Virus record (IMG/VR): IMGVR_UViG_3300025161_000004
Coordinates: 1 to 64,000 of that record
Direction: 5' to 3' (one strand)
Length of the DNA stretch: 64,000 bases
Below, in pieces: positions 1 to 26,875 of this stretch. Under the pieces are notes generated by a model. That model did not search any database. It was not told where the DNA came from and saw only the letters and a program-made list of their open reading frames with translations. The stretch's first letter is position 1. Every line of letters begins with the position of its first letter. The position numbers and the translations under genes were made by a program.

Positions 1-75
1 GCAGGTATCTTCTTCAATAAAATAACAAGCACAAGGGTAAAAATATGAAAAACCAAGAAATCTGCCCAAGCCCAT

Positions 76-133
76 CGCACAACAGCGGCTATACGCCATT
101 AAAAACGGCGCATAGCCGCAAAACGTTAGCAGT
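76..133 (+). repeat. attC-like hairpin (integron cassette-type recombination site)
   Basis: GCACAAC (77-83), stem GCGGCTAT-a-CGCC / GGCG-c-ATAGCCGC, then GTTAGCAGT (125-133). The reverse complement ACTGCTAAC occurs at 216-224, as expected at the other end of a cassette. Confidence 0.55.
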
Positions 134-468
134 GAACATTCGTTTTACAGATATGGTATTAGATACGGGAAAAATTTATATAGATGCAGTCATTGTGGAA
201 AAGAAAAAAGCAATTACTGCTAACAGTGGTGTAAGGGAAGCACGCCCTTTATATTCTCGATGGGTTTAAAATTTTTTGATTTACTTTGGGAGGGTTTCAG
301 GTCGCCTCCCATTTTTTTTAATGGTTTTGTATAATGTACATCTATTCATAGAATGTACGATTTTAAAATCAACTTTTATAGCTAAGAATATTAAACTTGC
401 CACAAGTAATAATCATATCTATTGAATCTTAGGTAATAAACAAATTTGAATATATCATTATATACTCA

Positions 469-17228: not shown

Positions 17229-17299
17229 TTTTATATTTTGGAGCGTAAAACCCATCGGTCTTTAGCCGATGGGATATAAGCGACAAATGGAGTGATGAT

Positions 17300-17710
17300 T
17301 TAACCTTGATTTAATATATATTGACGTATGGTTTCTGGTGAAGCCTCACCAATTGAACAGGCAAAATAACCATCAGACCAAAATGTTTTCTCAACCCAAA
17401 ATTGATTTAGCAAGAACTGACGATGCATACGCCAGATGTGAAACGTTGACTCTTGTTTTAACTTACGAACAATGGAACTGATTGACAACCTTGGAATGTA
17501 TTTAATAAGGAAGTGAATATGATTTACATCAGACTCCATTATCTCAATCTCAAAATCTGACCCATCAGATATGTTTTGAAGAAGTTGCTTCATATCATCA
17601 TTTAATTGACCAACCAGAAGTGGTTTGCGATATTTAACAGCAAAGATGATATGTGCTTTTAAATAGTGTTTTGAGCGATTTGTTGATGTGTAATTTGATT
17701 TTTTTGGCAT
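17300..17710 (-). CDS. tnpA: IS200/IS605 Y1 (HUH) transposase
   Basis: HIIFAVKYRK, HUH motif NHIH, FWSDGYF and catalytic Y in IRQYILNQ. Confidence 0.95.
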   Translation of the reverse strand: MPKKSNYTSTNRSKHYLKAHIIFAVKYRKPLLVGQLNDDMKQLLQNISDGSDFEIEIMESDVNHIHFLIKYIPRLSISSIVRKLKQESTFHIWRMHRQFLLNQFWVEKTFWSDGYFACSIGEASPETIRQYILNQG

Positions 17711-17796
17711 AATTAAGATTTTTTGTAAAAGTTTCCACCAAAAACAAACTTTTACAAAAAATTCGACTTGAAATGTGGAAAAATCATTTTTTTTCT

Positions 17797-17807
17797 AAGT
17801 ATTTATA
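17797..17807 (+). promoter_or_regulatory. phage late-type promoter motif AAGTATTTATA inside the IS
   Basis: The same motif precedes many structural and lysis genes in the window. Confidence 0.6.
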
Positions 17808-17838
17808 GATATAACATTTCATCTATAATCGTAAAGGA

Positions 17839-18348
17839 GTGGATTTAAAAAAGTACATAAGAAAAATAATCAGAGAAGAGTTCTTGAAAGAAGATGTTGG
17901 TGGTTTGGTATTATACCATGCCTCAAATGAATTGTTTGATAAATTTGAACTTAAGAAAGGGTATAGAACACATCTTTTTTCGGTTGAATTGACCGATTCT
18001 TATGCAATATTTTTAACTCCAGATGTGGAGGCAGCAAAGCAGTTTGGTGAAAAATATCTATATAAATGTAAAATCCATCCAAAGAGAACATTGGATTGGA
18101 GAGAATATTTAGACGTGAGAAGTTATGAGTGGCTTAAAAAGCAATTTGGGAATATCATCCCTTGGAGTGCAAGTGAATATTGGATGCTCTTGGATGATAA
18201 ACGTGTAATTGATTATTTACATCATAGAGGAATAGATTGTGTTATAATTAGTGAGATAGGTGAACACGACCAATTTGATACATATGCAATGCTTAATCCA
18301 AATGATATTGAAATTATTGAGGTGATTGATTTGAAAAAAAAAATTTGA
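17839..18348 (+). CDS. ADP-ribosyltransferase-like (ART-PolyVal-like) cargo protein with a phage leader sequence
   Basis: LYHAS..FDKF, AIFLTPD..AAKQFG, YLYKC and YAMLNPNDI. N-terminal MDLKKYIRKIIREEFLKE. Confidence 0.6.
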   Translation: MDLKKYIRKIIREEFLKEDVGGLVLYHASNELFDKFELKKGYRTHLFSVELTDSYAIFLTPDVEAAKQFGEKYLYKCKIHPKRTLDWREYLDVRSYEWLKKQFGNIIPWSASEYWMLLDDKRVIDYLHHRGIDCVIISEIGEHDQFDTYAMLNPNDIEIIEVIDLKKKI

Positions 18349-18830
18349 GTGAAAATCAATCTTCATCAAATCAAGAATATATTGCATATCACTCAAGTAA
18401 TTCAAAAATTGATGAGTTTGATTTTGATAAAATTGAATTAAAACCAAATTCTTCTACAAGAATTGATGGAATATTTTTTAGCAACATCCCACAAACATCT
18501 TGGGGTGATTATATCTATAAAGTAAAATTAATTTCGCAAAATCCAGCAATATTTGATTTAAGTAAAAGTAGATTTGATAGTTTAGGTGTTCAAGAAGCAT
18601 TTGATGCATTATTACGTGGCGATACATCATATATTATTGAAGACTTGGTTGAATATGGTGGTATAGAACAGGAAGATGCTGAAAATTTAGCTGAAAAATG
18701 GAGACGTTCTGATTTGATTGTTATTACAAACCAAGTGTATGGAAAACATGATACTGAATATATTGTGCCAGACCCATATTACAATGGAAAGTCTGCTCAA
18801 ATAATTAATTTGGGTTTAATTGAAAAATAA
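18345..18830 (+). CDS. second ART-PolyVal-like cargo domain, possibly fused to the upstream ORF by a -1 frameshift
   Basis: AYHSS..IDEFDF, GIFFS, WGDYIYKVKL...NP and EYIV. TTG start immediately after an A10 tract. Confidence 0.6.
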   Translation: MSENQSSSNQEYIAYHSSNSKIDEFDFDKIELKPNSSTRIDGIFFSNIPQTSWGDYIYKVKLISQNPAIFDLSKSRFDSLGVQEAFDALLRGDTSYIIEDLVEYGGIEQEDAENLAEKWRRSDLIVITNQVYGKHDTEYIVPDPYYNGKSAQIINLGLIEK

Positions 18831-19979
18831 ATGTTAAAGGCATATAAATATCGCATATTTCCAACAGAAGAGCAACAAGGTCTTCTTGCCAACATATTTG
18901 GTCAAACCAGATTTGTTTACAATCTTGGGCTGGAAACCAAAATATCTGCTTATGCTGGAAACAAAACAAACATTGATTGCTTTGACCTAATTAAACAGGT
19001 GAAGGAGCTGAAAGATACCGAATGTCCTTGGCTCAAGGAAGCACCATCACAGGCTTTACAAATGGCACTCAGAAACCTTGATAATGCATACACCAACTTC
19101 TTTAAGGGAAAAGGATTTCCAAAGTTTAAGAACAAACATGGAAAACAATCATTTCAGTTGCCACAAGGTGTGTTCTTATCAGAAGATAACAAACAAATAT
19201 TCATTCCAAAGCTTAAATTCGTTGGAATTGATTTGCATAGAGAATTTAAAGGCGATATTAAAACAGTTACTGTAAGCAGAACAGTAACAAACAAATATTT
19301 CGTGTCAATTTTGGTTGACAACAAACAGGAATTACCAAAGAAGAAACCAATAACAGAACAATCTGCTGTTGGGATTGACCTTGGGATAAAAGATTTTGCA
19401 ATAACATCAGATGGAAAGAAATTCGAGAACAAAGATTTCTTTAAATCTACAATGCAAAAATTAAGAGTAGCACAACGCTCTCTCGCAAGAAAGCAAAAGG
19501 GAAGCAATTATTATAAACAACAAAAACTCGTTGTTGCCTTGCTTCATGAAAAGGTGAAGAATCAAAGACAAGATTATCTTCACAAGATAAGTAAATACCT
19601 TGTTGATAATTATGATACTATTTGTCTTGAGGACTTATCTGTGAAGAACATGGTTAAAAACCACTGCCTTGCAAGAGCAATAAGTGATATGGGTTGGAGA
19701 GAATTCAGAACAATGTTGGAATATAAAGCTGAGTGGCAAGGAAAAAATCTATCAGTAATTGGTAGATTCGAGCCATCAAGCAAGACTTGCAATTGTTGTG
19801 GATATATCAACAAAGAATTGACTCTTAATGATAGGGAGTGGACATGCAAAGGTTGTAATACCAAACATGACCGTGATGTTAATGCATCAATAAATATTAA
19901 AAATTTCGGGCTTAGGAACAAGTCCAGCGTTGCTCAAAGTGATGGGATACCATGTGCTTGCAACGTAGAAGCCCATTAG
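18831..19979 (+). CDS. tnpB: RNA-guided endonuclease TnpB
   Basis: KAYKYRIFPT HTH, RuvC-I GIDLG, RuvC-II CLEDL, Zn finger CNCCG..CKGC and RuvC-III DRDVNA, all intact. Confidence 0.97.
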   Translation: MLKAYKYRIFPTEEQQGLLANIFGQTRFVYNLGLETKISAYAGNKTNIDCFDLIKQVKELKDTECPWLKEAPSQALQMALRNLDNAYTNFFKGKGFPKFKNKHGKQSFQLPQGVFLSEDNKQIFIPKLKFVGIDLHREFKGDIKTVTVSRTVTNKYFVSILVDNKQELPKKKPITEQSAVGIDLGIKDFAITSDGKKFENKDFFKSTMQKLRVAQRSLARKQKGSNYYKQQKLVVALLHEKVKNQRQDYLHKISKYLVDNYDTICLEDLSVKNMVKNHCLARAISDMGWREFRTMLEYKAEWQGKNLSVIGRFEPSSKTCNCCGYINKELTLNDREWTCKGCNTKHDRDVNASINIKNFGLRNKSSVAQSDGIPCACNVEAH

Positions 19980-20020
19980 TCTTTAGCTAATGGGTAGTTC
20001 ACTGAGTTCATATTATGGTT
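19890..20020 (+). ncRNA. TnpB omega/reRNA scaffold plus guide (guide from the right flank, 20003 onward)
   Basis: Stems gggctt/aagtcc, cgttgc/gcaacg and the right-end hairpin ending TCAC. The 5' boundary is approximate. Confidence 0.6.
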
Positions 20021-23283: not shown

Positions 23284-23308
23284 AAAAGGTCTATAATAAA
23301 TAGACCTT
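23284..23308 (-). terminator. intrinsic terminator-like hairpin
   Basis: aaggtctat / atagacctt inverted repeat with a T-tract on the minus strand, downstream of the gene ending at 23341. Confidence 0.55.
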
Positions 23309-23340
23309 CAATAAGAAAAAAATAATCTTATTATATCCTA

Positions 23341-23691
23341 TTAGTCACGAACTTTATCTAGTTCATTCTTGAATGGGTCATAATTAACTTGCACAATACG
23401 AACCCATACTCCTTCATCGAGAGTTACTGGTGCGTGTTCTTCATGAAGAACTACTGCCTCACCTTTAACCTCAAAGAAAAGTTGGTCTCTTGTTACATCA
23501 CCGAAATCCTTCTCGTTATCCGCAAATTCAATTATGGATGAATCGTTAATTGGAAAAATTTCGTGTGAATGACCACTCACTTCTCCGAGACCTACAACTA
23601 AACGTTCCGTGTTTTTTTTCATTAGAATCTCTGATTTTTCTACCTTGTAGAAAATCATGTCGCCTTGGCGTACCTTTCTTAAAATGTTCAT
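23341..23691 (-). CDS. conserved phage protein (RQGD/GHxH/HEEH, cupin-like)
   Basis: RQGD, GEVSGHSH and LHEEH motifs. Confidence 0.75.
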   Translation of the reverse strand: MNILRKVRQGDMIFYKVEKSEILMKKNTERLVVGLGEVSGHSHEIFPINDSSIIEFADNEKDFGDVTRDQLFFEVKGEAVVLHEEHAPVTLDEGVWVRIVQVNYDPFKNELDKVRD

Positions 23692-23723
23692 AGCTATGAT
23701 ATTAGAATTATTATTTATATGAA

Positions 23724-24395
23724 TTAAGATTCTTGCTCTATTGTGATATATTCTTCCCTTGTCAGAGGTGTTCCGTCAGGTTTCCTCATAGTCCAAGCAA
23801 TTGCATCTATCGCTTTTTGACATCTATGGTCTTTTGAATCAACGAACAAGAAAAATTTACGATCTGTAGATGGACAGTTACATTCTACAATGTAAATATC
23901 GTTTTGAGTGTTTAACTCACTCTTATCAATTTTATGCAATCTATAGGTATCTTTATATTCCACAAATTTCTCATCAAACATACTCTTAATAAACTTCTTA
24001 TTATTAATCGACTTCAAATCAGGCTTTAGAGTATGTTTTGGCTTTTCACCTATTAAAAAAATACGCTTTTGTTTTTTTATAATTGTTTCTTCATCTATAA
24101 GAGTAGATTTGAGATTTGTTAAGGCTGCTTCTGCACCTGCAATAGAAAAACAAGTCATCAGTATTTCAGAATTACCATGAAATTTCCGAATAAATTCTTT
24201 TGGTGTATATGCGACATTATTAGGGTCGTTCCAGAGTCTTTTTAACTCTTCAGGTTGAGTTGCGTCAGGATTATCAGGTTTATGGAAAATCCTTAATAGA
24301 TCATTCAATGTAAATTCAGGATCCATTCTGCGAATCCTAATGTAATCAATAATTGTTGGTACTTGTACACCATTCACAAAGTATGATTTTCTCAT
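23724..24395 (-). CDS. DUF6745-like phage protein
   Basis: C-terminal CPSTDRKFFLFV...AIAWT pattern. This family is usually paired with the RQGD protein. Confidence 0.6.
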   Translation of the reverse strand: MRKSYFVNGVQVPTIIDYIRIRRMDPEFTLNDLLRIFHKPDNPDATQPEELKRLWNDPNNVAYTPKEFIRKFHGNSEILMTCFSIAGAEAALTNLKSTLIDEETIIKKQKRIFLIGEKPKHTLKPDLKSINNKKFIKSMFDEKFVEYKDTYRLHKIDKSELNTQNDIYIVECNCPSTDRKFFLFVDSKDHRCQKAIDAIAWTMRKPDGTPLTREEYITIEQES

Positions 24396-24463
24396 AAAAC
24401 TATTATTTTATACGTCCAAATTTCCAATTTTCTTTTGAAAGAAACAAGTTTTTTTCAAAAAAA

Positions 24464-24589
24464 TTATTTCCGAAAATTTAATATCTTAATAGATAAATCA
24501 ACATGTTCAGAAGTAAGTCCTTTACTGAATGATGTATTGACGAAATTATTTCTTTGTTCGTATAAGATATCATCTTCGTCATCAAGAAT
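24464..24589 (-). pseudogene. C-terminal fragment of the HAD phosphatase that starts at 25661
   Basis: ILDDEDDILYEQRNNFVNTSFSKGLTSEHVDLSIKILN matches HAD motif IV and the tail of Swiss-army-knife HAD domains. Confidence 0.75.
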
Positions 24590-24668
24590 CAGATTGAGCC
24601 ATCGGGCGGACGTATTCCAAATTCCCCGCCTTCGGCAATACTTAGCGTTAGCCGTAATTGCTACGACA

Positions 24669-24878
24669 CTACTCATCATCATCTTCGACCTCATCTTCAT
24701 CTCCAAAATCAGCGACAATATCTCTACACAATTTAACCAGTTTGCGAATGTATTTTTTCTCATACTGATTTGCATTTTCTTCAACTTCTTTAATGCTTCC
24801 TGCTTCGGTTAAAGCATCGTAGCAATCTTGTAAATCTCTGTAGGTATTCTCAAACCTACAATAACTCATATTTCCCAT
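24669..24878 (-). CDS. small cassette-borne phage protein (MSYCRFENT family)
   Basis: MGNMSYCRFENTYRDLQDC. Confidence 0.7.
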   Translation of the reverse strand: MGNMSYCRFENTYRDLQDCYDALTEAGSIKEVEENANQYEKKYIRKLVKLCRDIVADFGDEDEVEDDDE

Positions 24879-24985
24879 TTTGTTTGAATTTATCCTTGAA
24901 CAACCGCAACTACGGCTAATAAACGGTAATACATGCCTTTGACTTCAAGGTATTTCATAATCAACTTTGTATATATACCATATTG

Positions 24986-25216
24986 TTAGCGGCTATGCCT
25001 ATCAGCACACTTCTGACAGACACCATATAATGTGCTGTGCAAACTGCCACTACTTACTACTATTGATTTTTGACTACTATAACGCAATTCACTTTCCCAA
25101 TGAAGTTCACCGCAGTTAGGGCAGTTTATAGCCCGTTCCTTTGGACGGCACAAGCCGCTAACAAGCGTTTTGCCGTCATGCTGCGGTTCGGTGGTATTAT
25201 CAAGTTTCGTTTCCAT
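24986..25216 (-). CDS. small cassette-borne Zn-ribbon protein
   Basis: CPNC and CQKC motifs. The stop codon TAA lies within the CGCTAAC box. Confidence 0.6.
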   Translation of the reverse strand: METKLDNTTEPQHDGKTLVSGLCRPKERAINCPNCGELHWESELRYSSQKSIVVSSGSLHSTLYGVCQKCADRHSR

Positions 25217-25277
25217 ATCAAAAAATGTTTTTAAGTGAAGCGTTCGGTTTCAAAATGCAGCACGAACGCAAAGCTGC

Positions 25278-25661
25278 TTATACGTTATAATCAATACCTA
25301 TTTTTTTATAATCATTACCATTATTGACAAAATTATTCATTAACCATTCTCTAATTTCACAACCTCTTGGGATAGAGGCATATCTATCTTTTCCAGAAAT
25401 GTATAATCTTGGGGTTACATCGATTATTCTTTCTGGATATAAAAATCCCCTAACCTTAAATATTTTCTTAAACTCATCTAAAGAAACGCCAATCCTCCAC
25501 GATGAACTTATAATTATGTCACAACCAGTAAGCCCCACAATTTTATTCAATGCATTTATTGATTCCTCATTAAATTTTTGATATCCATCATAAAGATAAT
25601 CTTTAAGGATATCAGCAGTTACCAATACACCATCAATATCTAAAAATAAGAACTTTCTCAT
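25278..25661 (-). pseudogene. N-terminal part of a HAD-family (Swiss-army-knife RNA-repair-like) phosphatase, truncated by the insertion
   Basis: FLFLDIDGVL, IIISSSWR, TP and RGCEIREWL are present, but the DD motif is missing and is found at 24464-24589. Confidence 0.78.
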
Positions 25662-26083
25662 GTGAATATAATATCATCAGACCTATCAATACGCTGTAAC
25701 AAAGTTACATGATATTTCATAATATCCTCACCATTCAATATTTTTTGGTAATCAATTTCATCAAGAATATTTTCAGACCAAGTTAACTCAAGACCAGCCC
25801 TTTGGCAATCAGTAATGAACTGATCGAGCGTCCTTGGATGAAATGGTATTGTATACGATTTATCTCTATTATAGATAGAATATCCCACAGGATAAGATTC
25901 GATAAAAATTCTACTGTCAATTTTATTGACATATGTTTGATATGAACCCTTATCTTTAAATTGCCAATTGGCAAATAATACCGTAATCATCTTAAAATCG
26001 AATTGTCTAAGCAAAAATTTTTTTGCTTCGTCCGAACAAGATGTTTCTATAAAAGATACGGTTCTGAGTTTTAATAAGCCCAT
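25658..26083 (-). CDS. hypothetical protein
   Basis: 141-aa ORF, ATGA overlap. Confidence 0.7.
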   Translation of the reverse strand: MGLLKLRTVSFIETSCSDEAKKFLLRQFDFKMITVLFANWQFKDKGSYQTYVNKIDSRIFIESYPVGYSIYNRDKSYTIPFHPRTLDQFITDCQRAGLELTWSENILDEIDYQKILNGEDIMKYHVTLLQRIDRSDDIIFT

Positions 26084-26127
26084 CTAATATATTAATGAAT
26101 GCCAATAATAAAAAAAATATCAATAAA

Positions 26128-26382
26128 TCAATTTAAAAATGTAATTACCATCAAATACATATCAATGTATTCGATTTTGAATTCAGAATACTTATTTAAA
26201 AGTATCATGAAAGTCTTTTTTCTCATGAATTCATTTGACTGCAGAATTAAATCTATTTCTTTGTTTGATAAAATATCAAACCCATAACGTAATTTTTCCA
26301 ATGTCTTTTCGAATGCAATTTTATTGTAAACAACAGGTAATGCGTAGCTATGTTTATAGGTATTAAAATTCTTAGATTCCAT
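26128..26382 (-). CDS. hypothetical protein
   Basis: 84-aa ORF. Confidence 0.55.
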   Translation of the reverse strand: MESKNFNTYKHSYALPVVYNKIAFEKTLEKLRYGFDILSNKEIDLILQSNEFMRKKTFMILLNKYSEFKIEYIDMYLMVITFLN

Positions 26383-26386
26383 AAAA

Positions 26387-26875
26387 TTACTTCAATGATT
26401 TTGTAAATAAACCACCCACAGGTTCATTATTAATATTGAATTTTTGAAATACAATACTATTACCATCAAATGATTTGATTCTATAAAATGCTTCCAATTC
26501 GTTGAAATCATTAAATTCACTTCTATGGAAAATTTTCATTGTGTTATTATCAACATTAACAATATAAACACCATGCAGGGCTTCAACTAAAATCATATAG
26601 TTTTTATCTAAAAAACGAACAGATAATATTTTATTAGGGCTTTTACTGTTAAGATCGGAAACAATATGCTCAAGATTCAACTTATATTCATACATATGAA
26701 TCAAATCATATTCACCAATACTTTTATAGACATTAATAATAGGATTTTCAAATAGAATACATTGAACTTCATATTCAACACCACTAAAATCCTTTCTATC
26801 ACGTTTTATATTCTCTTGAGCATATGTGGTGATTAAGGAAATAATTAACGCTGATATTAAGCCATTAATTTTCAT
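26387..26875 (-). CDS. secreted hypothetical protein
   Basis: Signal peptide ending TYA-Q. Confidence 0.65.
   Translation of the reverse strand: MKINGLISALIISLITTYAQENIKRDRKDFSGVEYEVQCILFENPIINVYKSIGEYDLIHMYEYKLNLEHIVSDLNSKSPNKILSVRFLDKNYMILVEALHGVYIVNVDNNTMKIFHRSEFNDFNELEAFYRIKSFDGNSIVFQKFNINNEPVGGLFTKSLK

What the first reader, a model, noticed from the sequence alone, without database searches (positions are those of the whole stretch)
24464..25661. HAD phosphatase gene split by an integron-like attC cassette array
Seen in sequence: the HAD N-half (DIDGVL, SSSWR) stops at ...IGIDYNV*. Its missing motif IV half (ILDDEDD...GLT...IKILN) resumes about 694 bp downstream at 24589, and joining 25284 to 24589 restores the frame. 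The insert holds three imperfect hairpins, each starting at a ..TAAC box (TTATAAC, CGCTAAC, GGCTAAC), and two small ORFs. The ends of each ORF unit are inverted complements (GTTAGCGGCT/AGCCGCTAAC; ATTAGCCGTAGTTGC/GCAATTACGGCTAAC), and one stop codon lies inside the TAAC box. Established knowledge: these are hallmarks of integron cassettes (RYYYAAC...GTTRRRY, complementary cassette ends). No integrase is visible in the window. Inference: a cassette-capture system is acting on a phage genome, using a host or distant tyrosine recombinase, and it may be excisable to restore the HAD gene.
Basis: partly seen in the sequence, partly recalled or inferred. Interest (0 to 1): 0.75.

Follow-up and report, generated by a model that had tools for sequence, protein, structure and literature searches.

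The report
Integron-like cassettes split a phage gene
A small phosphatase gene of a giant phage is cut in two by a 689-base fragment of an integron-style gene-cassette array, while a near-identical phage in another sample still has the uncut gene, so such cassettes move inside phages that carry no integrase.

Summary
The only HAD_SAK_2 gene of this 247-kb phage record is split: the N part is 25661..25281 and the C part 24592..24467, both on the minus strand. A related phage has the intact 165-aa gene. A contig from another metagenome, identical in the flanks, reads ...GATTATAAC-TAT-CTGATT..., which is the empty site. The insert is 25283..24595, 689 nt in place of one T.

It holds two small-gene cassettes and a truncated third site. 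Each cassette is bounded by 12-nt boxes, GTTA-N5-NGT at the start and AT[GT]-N5-TAAC at the end, that are complementary to each other.

The same architecture forms arrays of 3 to 11 co-oriented cassettes in this phage, in its relative and in unrelated phages. It consists of a TAAC box, a covarying 17-bp stem, a loop and a GTTA box. A covariance model built from those arrays scores the first site of the insert at 52.6 bits (E about 1e-8), and its 5' box is HAD coding sequence.

The other two "hairpins" are decayed or truncated. None of the three folds better than shuffled sequence. No tyrosine, serine or Y1 recombinase is shared by these phages.

This is a new variant of the known clusters of attC sites without an integrase (CALINs) in phages. 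The recombinase is unknown, and excision cannot restore HAD.

The parts
25281..25661 (-). HAD_SAK_2 gene, N-terminal fragment (127 codons, motifs DIDGVL and SSSWR). The premature stop is at 25280..25278, inside the insert.
   Evidence: Pfam PF18143 at 68.5 bits, profile positions 2-102 of 139. 75% identical to residues 1-122 of the intact relative.
25284..25295 (-). Target box ATTGATTATAAC. This is HAD coding sequence (I-D-Y-N) that mimics the 5' box AT[GT]N5TAAC of the site family. The insert starts right after its C (25284).
   Evidence: Positions 1-12 of the covariance-model match. The empty allele keeps ...GATTATAAC. The motif occurs only 138 times on both strands of the genome. The relative has ...GATTATAAT here.
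24595..25283 (-). The insert: 689 nt that replace a single T of the intact allele. GC content 40-47%.
   Evidence: Run X3 contig record 4 matches 24089-24594 with no differences, then reads A+GTTATAAT, which rejoins the sequence at 25284. Composition.
25151..25295 (-). Site 0: 5' box, 6-nt spacer, imperfect 20-bp stem, loop holding the ORF3 start codon, stem, then 3' box GTTAGCGGCTTG.
   Evidence: Model R1 at 52.6 bits, E 1.6e-8, full length 1-143. 74% identical to the site at G000 205011-205152. The loop and leader are homologous to L201.
24986..25216 (-). ORF3, 76 aa, with a CxxC...CxxC zinc-ribbon-like pattern. The start lies in the loop of site 0. The stop TAA is the TAA of the box ATAGCCGCTAAC (24996..24985). 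Cassette 1 is 25284..24986.
   Evidence: ORF list. Weak Zn_ribbon matches. Box pair GTTAGCGGCT/AGCCGCTAAC matches 12 of 12.
24909..24996 (-). Site 1 (decayed): box ATAGCCGCTAAC, a weak stem, then box ATTAGCCGTAGT with A in place of the usual first G.
   Evidence: Model R1 at 7.8 bits, boxes only. Fold z is about 0.
24669..24878 (-). ORF4, 69 aa, a small acidic protein of PHROG family phrog_8760 (MGNMSYCRFENT...), function unknown. Cassette 2 is 24985..24648 and ends with box ATTACGGCTAAC (24658..24647).
   Evidence: phrog_8760 at E 2e-12. 74 related loci in viral contigs, three of them inside the same kind of array. Box pair matches 13 of 14.
24595..24647 (-). Truncated third site: spacer GCTAA, stem arm GTATTGCC, a GC-rich hairpin (GGCGGGG...CCGCCC), then GATGGCTCA. 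It has no 3' arm or 3' box. It abuts HAD at a non-canonical junction.
   Evidence: Sequence. The piece 24604-24641 occurs in another context in run X3, record 5. No model match.
24467..24594 (-). HAD_SAK_2 gene, C-terminal fragment ((Y)LILDDEDD...ILNFRK, motif IV). Stop at 24466..24464.
   Evidence: PF18143 profile positions 108-139. 64% identical to residues 124-165 of the relative.

Best explanation
The HAD gene was hit by a fragment of an integron-like gene-cassette array.

**The site family (shown).** The sites are 56-146 nt long. Each has a 5' box AT[GT]-N5-TAAC, 4-6 unpaired bases, a 10-20 bp stem whose sequence varies but whose pairing is kept, a loop, the other stem arm, 0-3 bases, and a 3' box GTTA-N5-NGT. 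The 3' box of one site is complementary to the 5' box of the next site. Every small gene between two sites therefore carries complementary ends, as integron cassettes do.

**What the insert contains (shown).** It holds two such cassettes (site 0 + ORF3, decayed site 1 + ORF4) and a truncated third site.

**How it got there (inferred).**
- A multi-cassette DNA recombined with the HAD sequence ATTGATTATAA|C, which mimics a 5' box. On the other strand this reads G|TTATAAT, a GWT-type secondary site. The crossover was at the point where integron integrases cut.
- The enzyme would be a host-encoded, structure-recognising recombinase of the IntI kind, because the phages carry none.
- The far junction was then trimmed, or was made by an imprecise event.

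**Consequences.** HAD is inactivated: a stop follows codon 127 and motif IV is separated from the rest. The two cargo genes, both of unknown function, are added to the early-gene region. The event is recent and polymorphic. It cannot be reversed by site-specific excision.

**Confidence.** The figure of 0.68 blends about 0.85 for what the insert is with about 0.45 for an IntI-type insertion step.
For: **Split gene and empty allele.**. The flanks of the empty allele in run X3 are identical over 506, 283 and 201 nt. The occupied allele also appears in an independent run, X4.

**Site family.**
- A scan of related loci found arrays in L128, L130 and L132.
- RNAalifold gave a 17-pair stem, with compensatory changes in 16 of the pairs.
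- 82.8% of cells are paired against 58.2% in shuffles. The covariation score is 0.58 against 0.18. In both cases 0 of 500 shuffles reached the observed value. Slid controls gave 0.15-0.23.

**Cassette-end complementarity.**
- Adjacent 3'/5' boxes match at 6.6 of 8 positions, and 10 of 10 pairs reach at least 6.
- Non-adjacent pairs match at 3.0 of 8, and boxes of the same site at 2.9 of 8.
- In the insert the two pairs match 12 of 12 and 13 of 14.

**Covariance model.** The model was built without any window sequence.
- Site 0 scores 52.6 bits, E 1.6e-8.
- Other sites in the same genome lie at 202813, 203872, 205011 and 150404.
- It finds 11, 7, 4, 4 and 3 sites in five other phage contigs. 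It finds none in 55 other loci that hold ORF4 homologues and none in 6 bacterial loci.

**In-register target box.** The motif frequency is 2.8e-4 per position-strand.

**No recombinase in the phages.** PF00589 is absent from G000 and from G002-G006. PF01797 and PF00239 are absent from G001-G005. There is no shared recombinase-like protein.

**Precedent.** Clusters of attC sites without integrase occur in virulent phages, and five of six tested phage attC sites were recombined by IntI1 (PMC9892861). IntI inserts cassettes at GWT sites in genes, and imprecise excision deletes flanking DNA (10.1101/2022.09.11.507474).
Against: - No integron integrase was found or could be searched for in the unknown host.
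- The sites are not canonical attC. They have a 12-nt box, an asymmetric spacer instead of a central unpaired spacer, and no defined extrahelical bases.
- In 12 of 29 sites the downstream ORF starts inside the loop.
- The one published phage site with this layout, P12002L_attC1, was the one that IntI1 did not recombine.
- The second junction is not at a box, and 1-5 nt are missing compared with a clean crossover.
- The insert's own hairpins do not fold better than shuffles.
- Identical 12-nt boxes recur next to non-homologous DNA in unrelated phages. A simple integron history does not predict this.
- HAD's target resembles the box ATTGTGTATAAC at G000 205 kb in 10 of 12 positions. Microhomology-driven recombination could therefore give the same junction.
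Confidence: 0.68

Rival explanations
1. The object is the same, a fragment of a cassette array, but it entered HAD by illegitimate or microhomology-mediated recombination with a co-infecting phage or another part of the same genome. No site-specific recombinase acted at this step.
For: - HAD ...GTATTGATTATAAC shares 12 of 14 bases with ...GTATTGTGTATAAC upstream of the site at G000 205011. The latter sequence recurs in the relative phage G001.
- The far junction is untidy and shares only AT with the target.
- The authors of PMC9892861 propose off-target homologous or illegitimate recombination at box-like motifs for phage attC clusters.
Against: - The junction falls exactly at TAA|C, with the spacer and stem following at the family's normal distance. 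The hybrid site therefore scores 52.6 bits over its full length.
- Microhomology alone does not explain the cassette-end complementarity seen throughout the arrays.
Confidence: 0.22
2. The sites are RNA elements, or generic single-strand elements, of polycistronic early transcripts such as processing or stability hairpins. The complementarity of gene ends would then be kept by selection for a stem that loops out each ORF. It would not be a trace of recombination.
For: - Start codons and A-rich leaders lie in the loops of 12 of 29 sites.
- In the stems, G.T outnumbers A.C by 21 to 9 on the sense strand.
- Identical boxes recur without homologous flanks.
Against: - TAAC and GTTA are invariant and at fixed spacing.
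- Arrays differ in cassette content between related phages.
- The HAD event is a DNA insertion bounded at a box.
- Similar phage sites are proven IntI1 substrates.
- No Rfam family matches the region.
Confidence: 0.08
3. The insert is a non-autonomous IS200/IS605-type element (PATE) moved by the phage's own Y1 transposase TnpA. Such elements insert 3' of a short target (TAAC) and carry subterminal hairpins.
For: - TnpA (17300..17710, 112 bits) and TnpB (18831..19979) lie 5-7 kb away.
- The insertion lies right after TAAC, and the insert ends ...CTCAA-T.
Against: - The IS ends carry hairpins CCCATCGG-tctttag-CCGATGGG and CCCATTAG-tctttag-CTAATGGG. These are absent from the insert.
- The same cassette family fills phages that have no Y1 transposase.
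- IS200/IS605 elements have no complementary unit ends.
- One target base is lost.
Confidence: 0.04
4. The insert is a self-splicing intron (a group I intron, or an intron-transposon chimera, IStron), so HAD is still made from spliced mRNA.
For: - The insert interrupts a gene cleanly enough that a same-length protein could be joined.
- Phage introns and IS605-linked IStrons exist (own knowledge).
Against: - No Rfam match at E up to 10 with permissive filters.
- No ribozyme-like fold: z is about 0.
- The insert consists of units found as ordinary intergenic arrays elsewhere.
- The boundaries lack the U/G splice-site signature in any frame-preserving register, judged by reading.
Confidence: 0.02

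Closest known systems
Clusters of attC sites lacking an integron integrase (CALINs) in virulent phages (Qi et al. 2023, PMC9892861). One example is Polaribacter phage P12002L.
   Same: - Arrays of small co-oriented genes are separated by imperfect palindromes with ...TAAC and GTTA... boxes.
- The phages carry no integrase.
- Cargo often includes orphan DNA methyltransferases, also seen in L128, L130 and L132.
- P12002L itself holds five or more sites of the present layout.
- The published site P12002L_attC1 reads TGCTAAC-GGCTAC-stem-ATT-GTTAGGC.
   Different: - Here the array fragment sits inside a phage gene and kills it, and the empty allele is known.
- The family has a 12-nt box, an asymmetric spacer, two length classes (about 87 and 126 nt) and ORF starts in the loops.
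- It is much more common in uncultured phages than the 17 clusters reported in that paper suggest.
- P12002L_attC1 was not recombined by IntI1.
attC x attG insertion of integron cassettes into genomes (Loot et al., bioRxiv 10.1101/2022.09.11.507474)
   Same: - A cassette is inserted outside any att site, at a minimal 5'-GWT-3' target, and disrupts a gene.
- Imprecise later events delete neighbouring DNA.
- On the plus strand the HAD junction reads ...TTATAC-G|TTATAATC.
   Different: - That work used IntI1 in E. coli and Vibrio chromosomes.
- Here the target is a lytic-type phage genome and the integrase is unknown.
- Only one of the two junctions is canonical.
Canonical attC sites of mobile and chromosomal integrons (for example attC_aadA7, Vibrio repeats)
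   Same: - Length range.
- AAC/GTT triplets.
- Structure is conserved while sequence is not.
- The cassette start is complementary to the box at the cassette end.
- The stop codon often lies in the box.
   Different: - There is no attI, Pc promoter or intI nearby.
- Canonical sites have nearly symmetric 5-6 nt spacers and extrahelical bases in the L box (own knowledge, and sequences).
- By the position of the presumed cut (TAA|C on the sense strand), the genes here lie on what would be the attC bottom strand. This is opposite to most integron cassettes (inference).
PeSL (promoter-early stem-loop) mobile cassettes of T4-type phages (Arbiol et al. 2010; recalled from memory, not checked here)
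   Same: Small accessory phage genes are flanked by repeated stem-loop modules, which are thought to drive modular shuffling between phages.
   Different: - PeSL modules are direct repeats that carry a promoter.
- Shuffling is by homologous recombination.
- There are no TAAC/GTTA boxes and no complementary cassette ends.
IS200/IS605 elements and their hairpin-bearing derivatives
   Same: - Recognition of single-strand hairpins.
- Insertion next to a 4-5 nt target.
- A copy of such an IS is in the window.
   Different: Hairpin sequences are element-specific and identical at both ends. The units have no complementary ends. See the rival explanation on IS200/IS605.

Membership tests
attC recombination site / integron cassette | Imperfect palindrome of about 57-141 bp with outer (R''/R') and inner (L''/L') paired boxes | tested here: met
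   The sites are 56-146 nt long, with 4 invariant outer pairs (TAAC/GTTA) and a 17-pair inner stem. In the insert only site 0 meets this. Site 1 is decayed and site 2 truncated.
attC recombination site / integron cassette | Conserved 5'-AAC-3' and 5'-GTT-3' triplets at the two ends (RYYYAAC ... GTTRRRY) | tested here: met
   AAC and GTT are invariant in 12 of 12 aligned sites. They are present in 27 of 29 model hits. The insert boxes are TATAAC, CGCTAAC and GGCTAAC on the 5' side and GTTAGCG and ATTAGCC on the 3' side. The RYYY/RRRY parts fit only loosely.
attC recombination site / integron cassette | Structure conserved while sequence is not (covariation in the stems) | tested here: met
   16 of 17 stem pairs show compensatory changes. 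The covariation score is 0.58 against 0.18 in shuffles, with 0 of 500 shuffles reaching it.
attC recombination site / integron cassette | The first bases of a cassette are complementary to the box at its end (a trace of a circular intermediate cut at G|TT) | tested here: met
   Adjacent boxes match at 6.6 of 8 positions, against 3.0 of 8 for non-adjacent boxes. The insert's pairs match 12 of 12 and 13 of 14.
attC recombination site / integron cassette | Unpaired central spacer and extrahelical bases that mark the recombining bottom strand | tested here: inconclusive
   The unpaired spacer is asymmetric, 4-6 nt on one side and 0-3 nt on the other. No conserved bulged bases were identified. There is a weak G.T over A.C bias on the sense strand, 21 to 9, p = 0.04.
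attC recombination site / integron cassette | Recognised and recombined by an integron integrase (IntI) | not testable with these tools
   No PF00589 domain in G000 or G002-G006. The host is unknown. In the literature, five of six phage attC sites worked with IntI1, and the one with this layout did not.
attC recombination site / integron cassette | Detected by the curated attC covariance model (IntegronFinder, or HattCI with Infernal) | not tested
   That model is not available here and Rfam has no attC family. A family-specific model (R1) was built instead.
Complete integron | intI gene with attI site and Pc promoter next to the array | tested here: not met
   No tyrosine recombinase in G000 or G002-G006. 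These arrays are attC-like clusters without integrase, not integrons.
attG-type secondary-site insertion | The junction lies at 5'-G|WT-3' of the target, a complete attC abuts it, and the second junction is at the same target dinucleotide | tested here: inconclusive
   One junction fits: the plus strand reads ...TTATAC-G|TTATAATC, and it is in register with a 12-nt box mimic. The other junction (24595|24594) lies in a truncated site, and 1-5 target bases are missing.
IS200/IS605 derivative (PATE) | Subterminal hairpins like those of the partner IS, and a clean insertion 3' of its target | tested here: not met
   The IS hairpins (CCCATNNG...CNNATGGG) are absent from the insert. One target base is lost.
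Group I intron | Conserved ribozyme core | tested here: not met
   No Rfam match at E up to 10.
HAD_SAK_2 phosphatase (the interrupted gene) | Both fragments align colinearly to one full-length member and to the family profile | tested here: met

The most novel reading that the evidence does not exclude
These arrays may be a phage-borne cassette-exchange system of their own, not passive debris of bacterial integrons.

- It would use a limited vocabulary of 12-bp boxes (AT[GT]N5TAAC / GTTAN5NGT).
- The sites would supply start codons and leader peptides in their loops.
- Genes would lie on the strand that folds.
- The recombinase would be unidentified, either a host enzyme that is not a classical IntI or a new phage protein.

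Like-boxed slots would let unrelated phages swap accessory genes. Occasional off-target hits, such as the HAD insertion, would be its footprint.
Probability: 0.25. Interest if true: 0.85.

Novelty: new variant of a known kind. Interest (0 to 1): 0.64.

Why it matters
**A caught event.** attC-type clusters in phages have so far been described as static features. Here the occupied and empty alleles sit in near-identical phages from different samples. The junction lies on a box mimic inside a phage gene. So cassette movement happens in phage genomes and can inactivate phage genes.

**A definable site family.** The family is widespread in unrelated integrase-less phages, including the cultured Polaribacter phage P12002L. 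It departs from canonical attC in several ways. It can now be searched with a covariance model.

**An open enzyme question.** Which enzyme moves these cassettes is unknown. If it is the host integron integrase, phages are a real route for cassette traffic. If it is not, a new recombination system is waiting to be found.

**Practical points.** The boxes mark accessory and anti-defence gene regions in phage genomes. They may also offer natural landing pads for phage engineering.

Tried and rejected
- **Rfam scan of 24200-25900 at E up to 10:** only chance-level hits. There was no intron and no known RNA family.
- **DNA folding of the three hairpins on both strands:** no better than shuffled sequence. 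Homology and the covariance model rescued site 0.
- **blastn of the region against 50,697 GenBank phages:** no match.
- **Pattern GCAATTACNGCTAAC in viral contigs:** 120+ hits, mostly chance for 14 specified bases. The scan was largely wasted, although two of the contigs (L109, L115) do carry arrays.
- **Simple TAAC-stem-GTTA scanner at a low threshold:** no enrichment over shuffles. Only high-scoring hits were informative.
- **Inversion of cassette 1 between its inverted repeats:** this would give a 33-aa product, so I dropped an inverton reading (reading).
- **Donor or other contexts of the insert:** an exact 30-mer across ORF3 and site 1 occurs only in the source contig among JGI metagenomes. 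The empty-site 27-mer is absent from IMG/VR.
- **ORF4 family in bacterial genomes:** 8 loci, none with sites. There is therefore no lead to a host or an integron.
- **Function of the cargo:** ORF4 has no solved-structure or NCBIfam match. ORF3 has only weak zinc-ribbon hits.
- **Shared recombinase among five phage proteomes:** none.
Full report
**Setting.** The window is the first 64 kb of a 246,768-bp IMG/VR phage record, 28.5% GC and estimated 79% complete. The finding lies on the minus strand among small early-type genes.

**The observation.**
- The ORF 25661..25278 (127 codons, DIDGVL and SSSWR motifs) matches Pfam HAD_SAK_2 over profile positions 2-102 of 139. The 41 codons from 24589 match positions 108-139.
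- A related 178-kb phage contig (L002) has the same neighbouring genes and an uninterrupted 165-aa HAD gene, which matches the profile end to end.
- The two window fragments align to residues 1-122 and 124-165 of that protein. It is the only HAD_SAK_2 gene in the record.
- The stretch between the fragments is 40-47% GC, in a 25-30% background.
- It holds two ORFs of 76 and 69 aa, and two pairs of inverted repeats that match 12 of 12 and 13 of 14.

**The empty site.** I laid assembled contigs of four public runs on 23300-26700.
- The source-like run X1 covers the whole stretch in one piece. An independent hot-spring run, X4, has a contig across the HAD-C/insert junction (24529-24968, no differences).
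- In a third run, X3, a contig matches 24089-24594 without a single difference and then continues A-GTTATAAT, that is, straight into 25284.
- On the coding strand this allele reads GAT TAT AAC TAT CTG ATT (D-Y-N-Y-L-I), the same length as the relative's DYNYLII.
- Other X3 contigs match the rest of HAD with no differences, and X3 has nothing over the insert.
- So the insert is 25283..24595, 689 nt in place of one T. The event is recent and polymorphic between populations.

**What the insert is made of.** Reading the coding strand, every unit is framed by 12-nt boxes.

| Box | Sequence | Coordinates |
|---|---|---|
| Target box (HAD's own codons) | ATTGATTATAAC | 25295..25284 |
| 3' box of site 0 | GTTAGCGGCTTG | 25162..25151 |
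| 5' box of site 1 (ORF3 stop is its TAA) | ATAGCCGCTAAC | 24996..24985 |
| 3' box of site 1 | ATTAGCCGTAGT | 24920..24909 |
| 5' box of site 2 | ATTACGGCTAAC | 24658..24647 |

The same GTTAGCGGCT...AGCCGCTAAC pair frames an unrelated gene at 205.1-205.6 kb of the same genome. That gene belongs to the A1S_2505 family of phage non-structural proteins. The 5' region of that locus is 74% identical to the 5' end of the insert.

**The site family.**
- *Arrays in other phages.* Loci holding homologues of ORF4 (PHROG family phrog_8760; 74 loci) showed where this architecture is well preserved. In L128, L130 and L132 co-oriented small ORFs are separated by sites of the form TAAC, 4-6 nt, 10-20 bp stem, loop, stem, 0-3 nt, GTTA. 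Further arrays lie in the relative G001, about 5 kb from its HAD gene, and in L115.
- *Box complementarity.* The 3' box of each site is complementary to the 5' box of the next site. Ten of ten adjacent pairs match at 6 or more of 8 positions (mean 6.6). Non-adjacent pairs average 3.0 and boxes of the same site 2.9. This is the logic of integron cassettes, in which the start of a cassette derives from its own attC.
- *Stem covariation.* An alignment of 12 sites gives a 17-pair stem with compensatory changes in 16 pairs. 82.8% of cells are paired against 58.2% in shuffles, and the covariation score is 0.58 against 0.18, with 0 of 500 shuffles reaching either value. Sliding the partners collapses the signal.
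- *Covariance model.* I built model R1 from these 12 sites, none from the window. It finds 25295..25151 at 52.6 bits (E 1.6e-8, full length) and a short site at 136..72 at 41.9 bits. In the whole genome it also finds 202813-202953, 203872-204010 and 150404-150522. It finds 11, 7, 4, 4 and 3 sites in five other phage contigs. It finds none in 55 other ORF4 loci and none in six bacterial loci.
- *The insert's sites.* Site 0 is a good family member, and its 5' box is HAD sequence. Site 1 keeps only its boxes (7.8 bits). The third is cut off in its loop.

**Geometry.**
- The insert starts exactly after the C of a HAD sequence that fits AT[GT]N5TAAC. That motif occurs 138 times on both strands of the genome, 2.8e-4 per position-strand. 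The relative has TAAT at this spot.
- On the plus strand the junction reads ...TTATAC-G|TTATAATC. This is G|TT at a GWT-type site, the point where integron integrases cut and the minimal target of attC x attG insertion.
- In 12 of 29 sites the downstream ORF starts in the loop and runs through the 3' arm and box in the frame GTT-ANN. ORF3 is one of these. Its leader METKLDNT..PQHD recurs in L201 and, in related form, in L130. In 8 of 29 sites an ORF of at least 40 codons ends on the TAA of TAAC.
- One pair of homologous sites, L130:4002-4105 and its counterpart in G001, shares the site and the downstream DNA.
- Together this suggests that a cassette is site plus downstream gene, cut at TAA|C on the sense strand. 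That would make the sense strand the equivalent of the attC bottom strand.
- G.T pairs outnumber A.C mismatches 21 to 9 on that strand (p = 0.04). This part is inference.

**The far junction.** The sequence ...GATGGCTCA|ATCTGATT is not at a box. The 38 nt before it (24604-24641, a stem arm plus a GC hairpin) occur in another context in X3. Compared with a clean single crossover, 1-5 nt are missing. The cause may be an imprecise resolution, a later deletion, or an illegitimate event. Because of this, no pair of sites can excise the insert and restore HAD. Removing both cassettes would leave a 53-nt scar. The intact allele is best read as never occupied.

**Enzyme.**
- The record has no Phage_integrase domain. 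Five other phage records with such loci also have none, and three of them are 95-100% complete.
- Y1 transposase and resolvase domains are absent from five such records, G001-G005.
- The proteomes of five site-bearing phages share no recombinase-like protein.
- The window itself has an IS605-type unit (TnpA, TnpB). Its end hairpins are unrelated to the insert.
- A host enzyme is therefore the most likely agent, but the host could not be reached with the tools at hand.

**Comparison with what is known.**
- Qi et al. 2023 (PMC9892861) reported 17 clusters of attC sites without integrase in phages, including virulent ones. They showed that five of six phage attC sites are used by IntI1. Their P12002L_attC1 has the present layout and was the exception. 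My scans find at least five sites of this family in P12002L.
- Loot et al. (bioRxiv 10.1101/2022.09.11.507474) showed integrase-driven cassette insertion at GWT sites, with gene disruption and imprecise excision.
- The present case is a natural example of that kind of event in a phage genome. It involves a site family that departs from canonical attC.

**Unexplained.** Identical 12-nt boxes recur in unrelated phages next to non-homologous cassette bodies and stems. This hints at a limited box vocabulary, or at exchange of gene bodies between like boxes.

**Verdict.** The integron-like reading is largely right for what the insert is. It remains open for which enzyme moved it, and it is wrong on reversibility. 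I rate this a new variant of a known kind and of solid interest. I am about 0.85 confident in the identity of the insert and about 0.45 in an IntI-type insertion step.

Noticed in passing
window 17250-20010: An IS605-type unit inside the phage. It has TnpA (Y1 transposase, 17300..17710, minus strand) and TnpB (18831..19979, plus strand), with two unannotated cargo ORFs of 169 and 161 aa between them. The end hairpins match each other: CCCATCGG-tctttag-CCGATGGG near 17255-17277 and CCCATTAG-tctttag-CTAATGGG near 19985-20007.
   Followed up: partly
window 72-136 (minus strand), within a GC-rich island at 1-330: A short-loop member of the same site family (41.9 bits). It lies at the very start of the contig, with the box pair GTTAGCAGT/ACTGCTAAC around 125-224. 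The contig end may cut an array.
   Followed up: partly
G000 202200-205600 (outside the window; L125 covers 203000-207500): The phage's own cassette region has sites at 202813-202953, 203872-204010 and 205011-205152. One 195-aa ORF contains an internal 3' box and ends on its partner 5' box (GTTATGGGCA...TGCCCATAAC). A repeated tail CGGTTGCAAATATAAAACGTT follows CCGCTAA both here and at 150.4 kb.
   Followed up: partly
L204/L205 (relative phage G001, about 37.7-40.8 kb): The related phage has a four-site array about 5 kb from its intact HAD gene. No strong site was found at the corresponding place in the window, so array content differs between the two relatives.
   Followed up: no
L202 (Polaribacter phage P12002L) 32223-39245, minus strand: A cultured lytic phage carries at least five sites of this layout between its methyltransferase and early genes, with boxes ATT-N5-[TC]AAC. 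The methyltransferase gp54 is framed by complementary boxes (GTTAcctat ... ataggTAAC-like). This makes it an experimentally usable model.
   Followed up: partly
L128, L130, L132 arrays: Site lengths fall into two classes, about 87 nt and about 126 nt. Several cassettes encode orphan DNA methyltransferases.
   Followed up: no
L127-L200: ORF4 belongs to a very widespread small acidic phage protein family with an almost invariant N-terminus, MGNMSYCRFENT, and two conserved cysteines. It has no annotated function or solved structure. Most copies are not in cassette arrays.
   Followed up: partly
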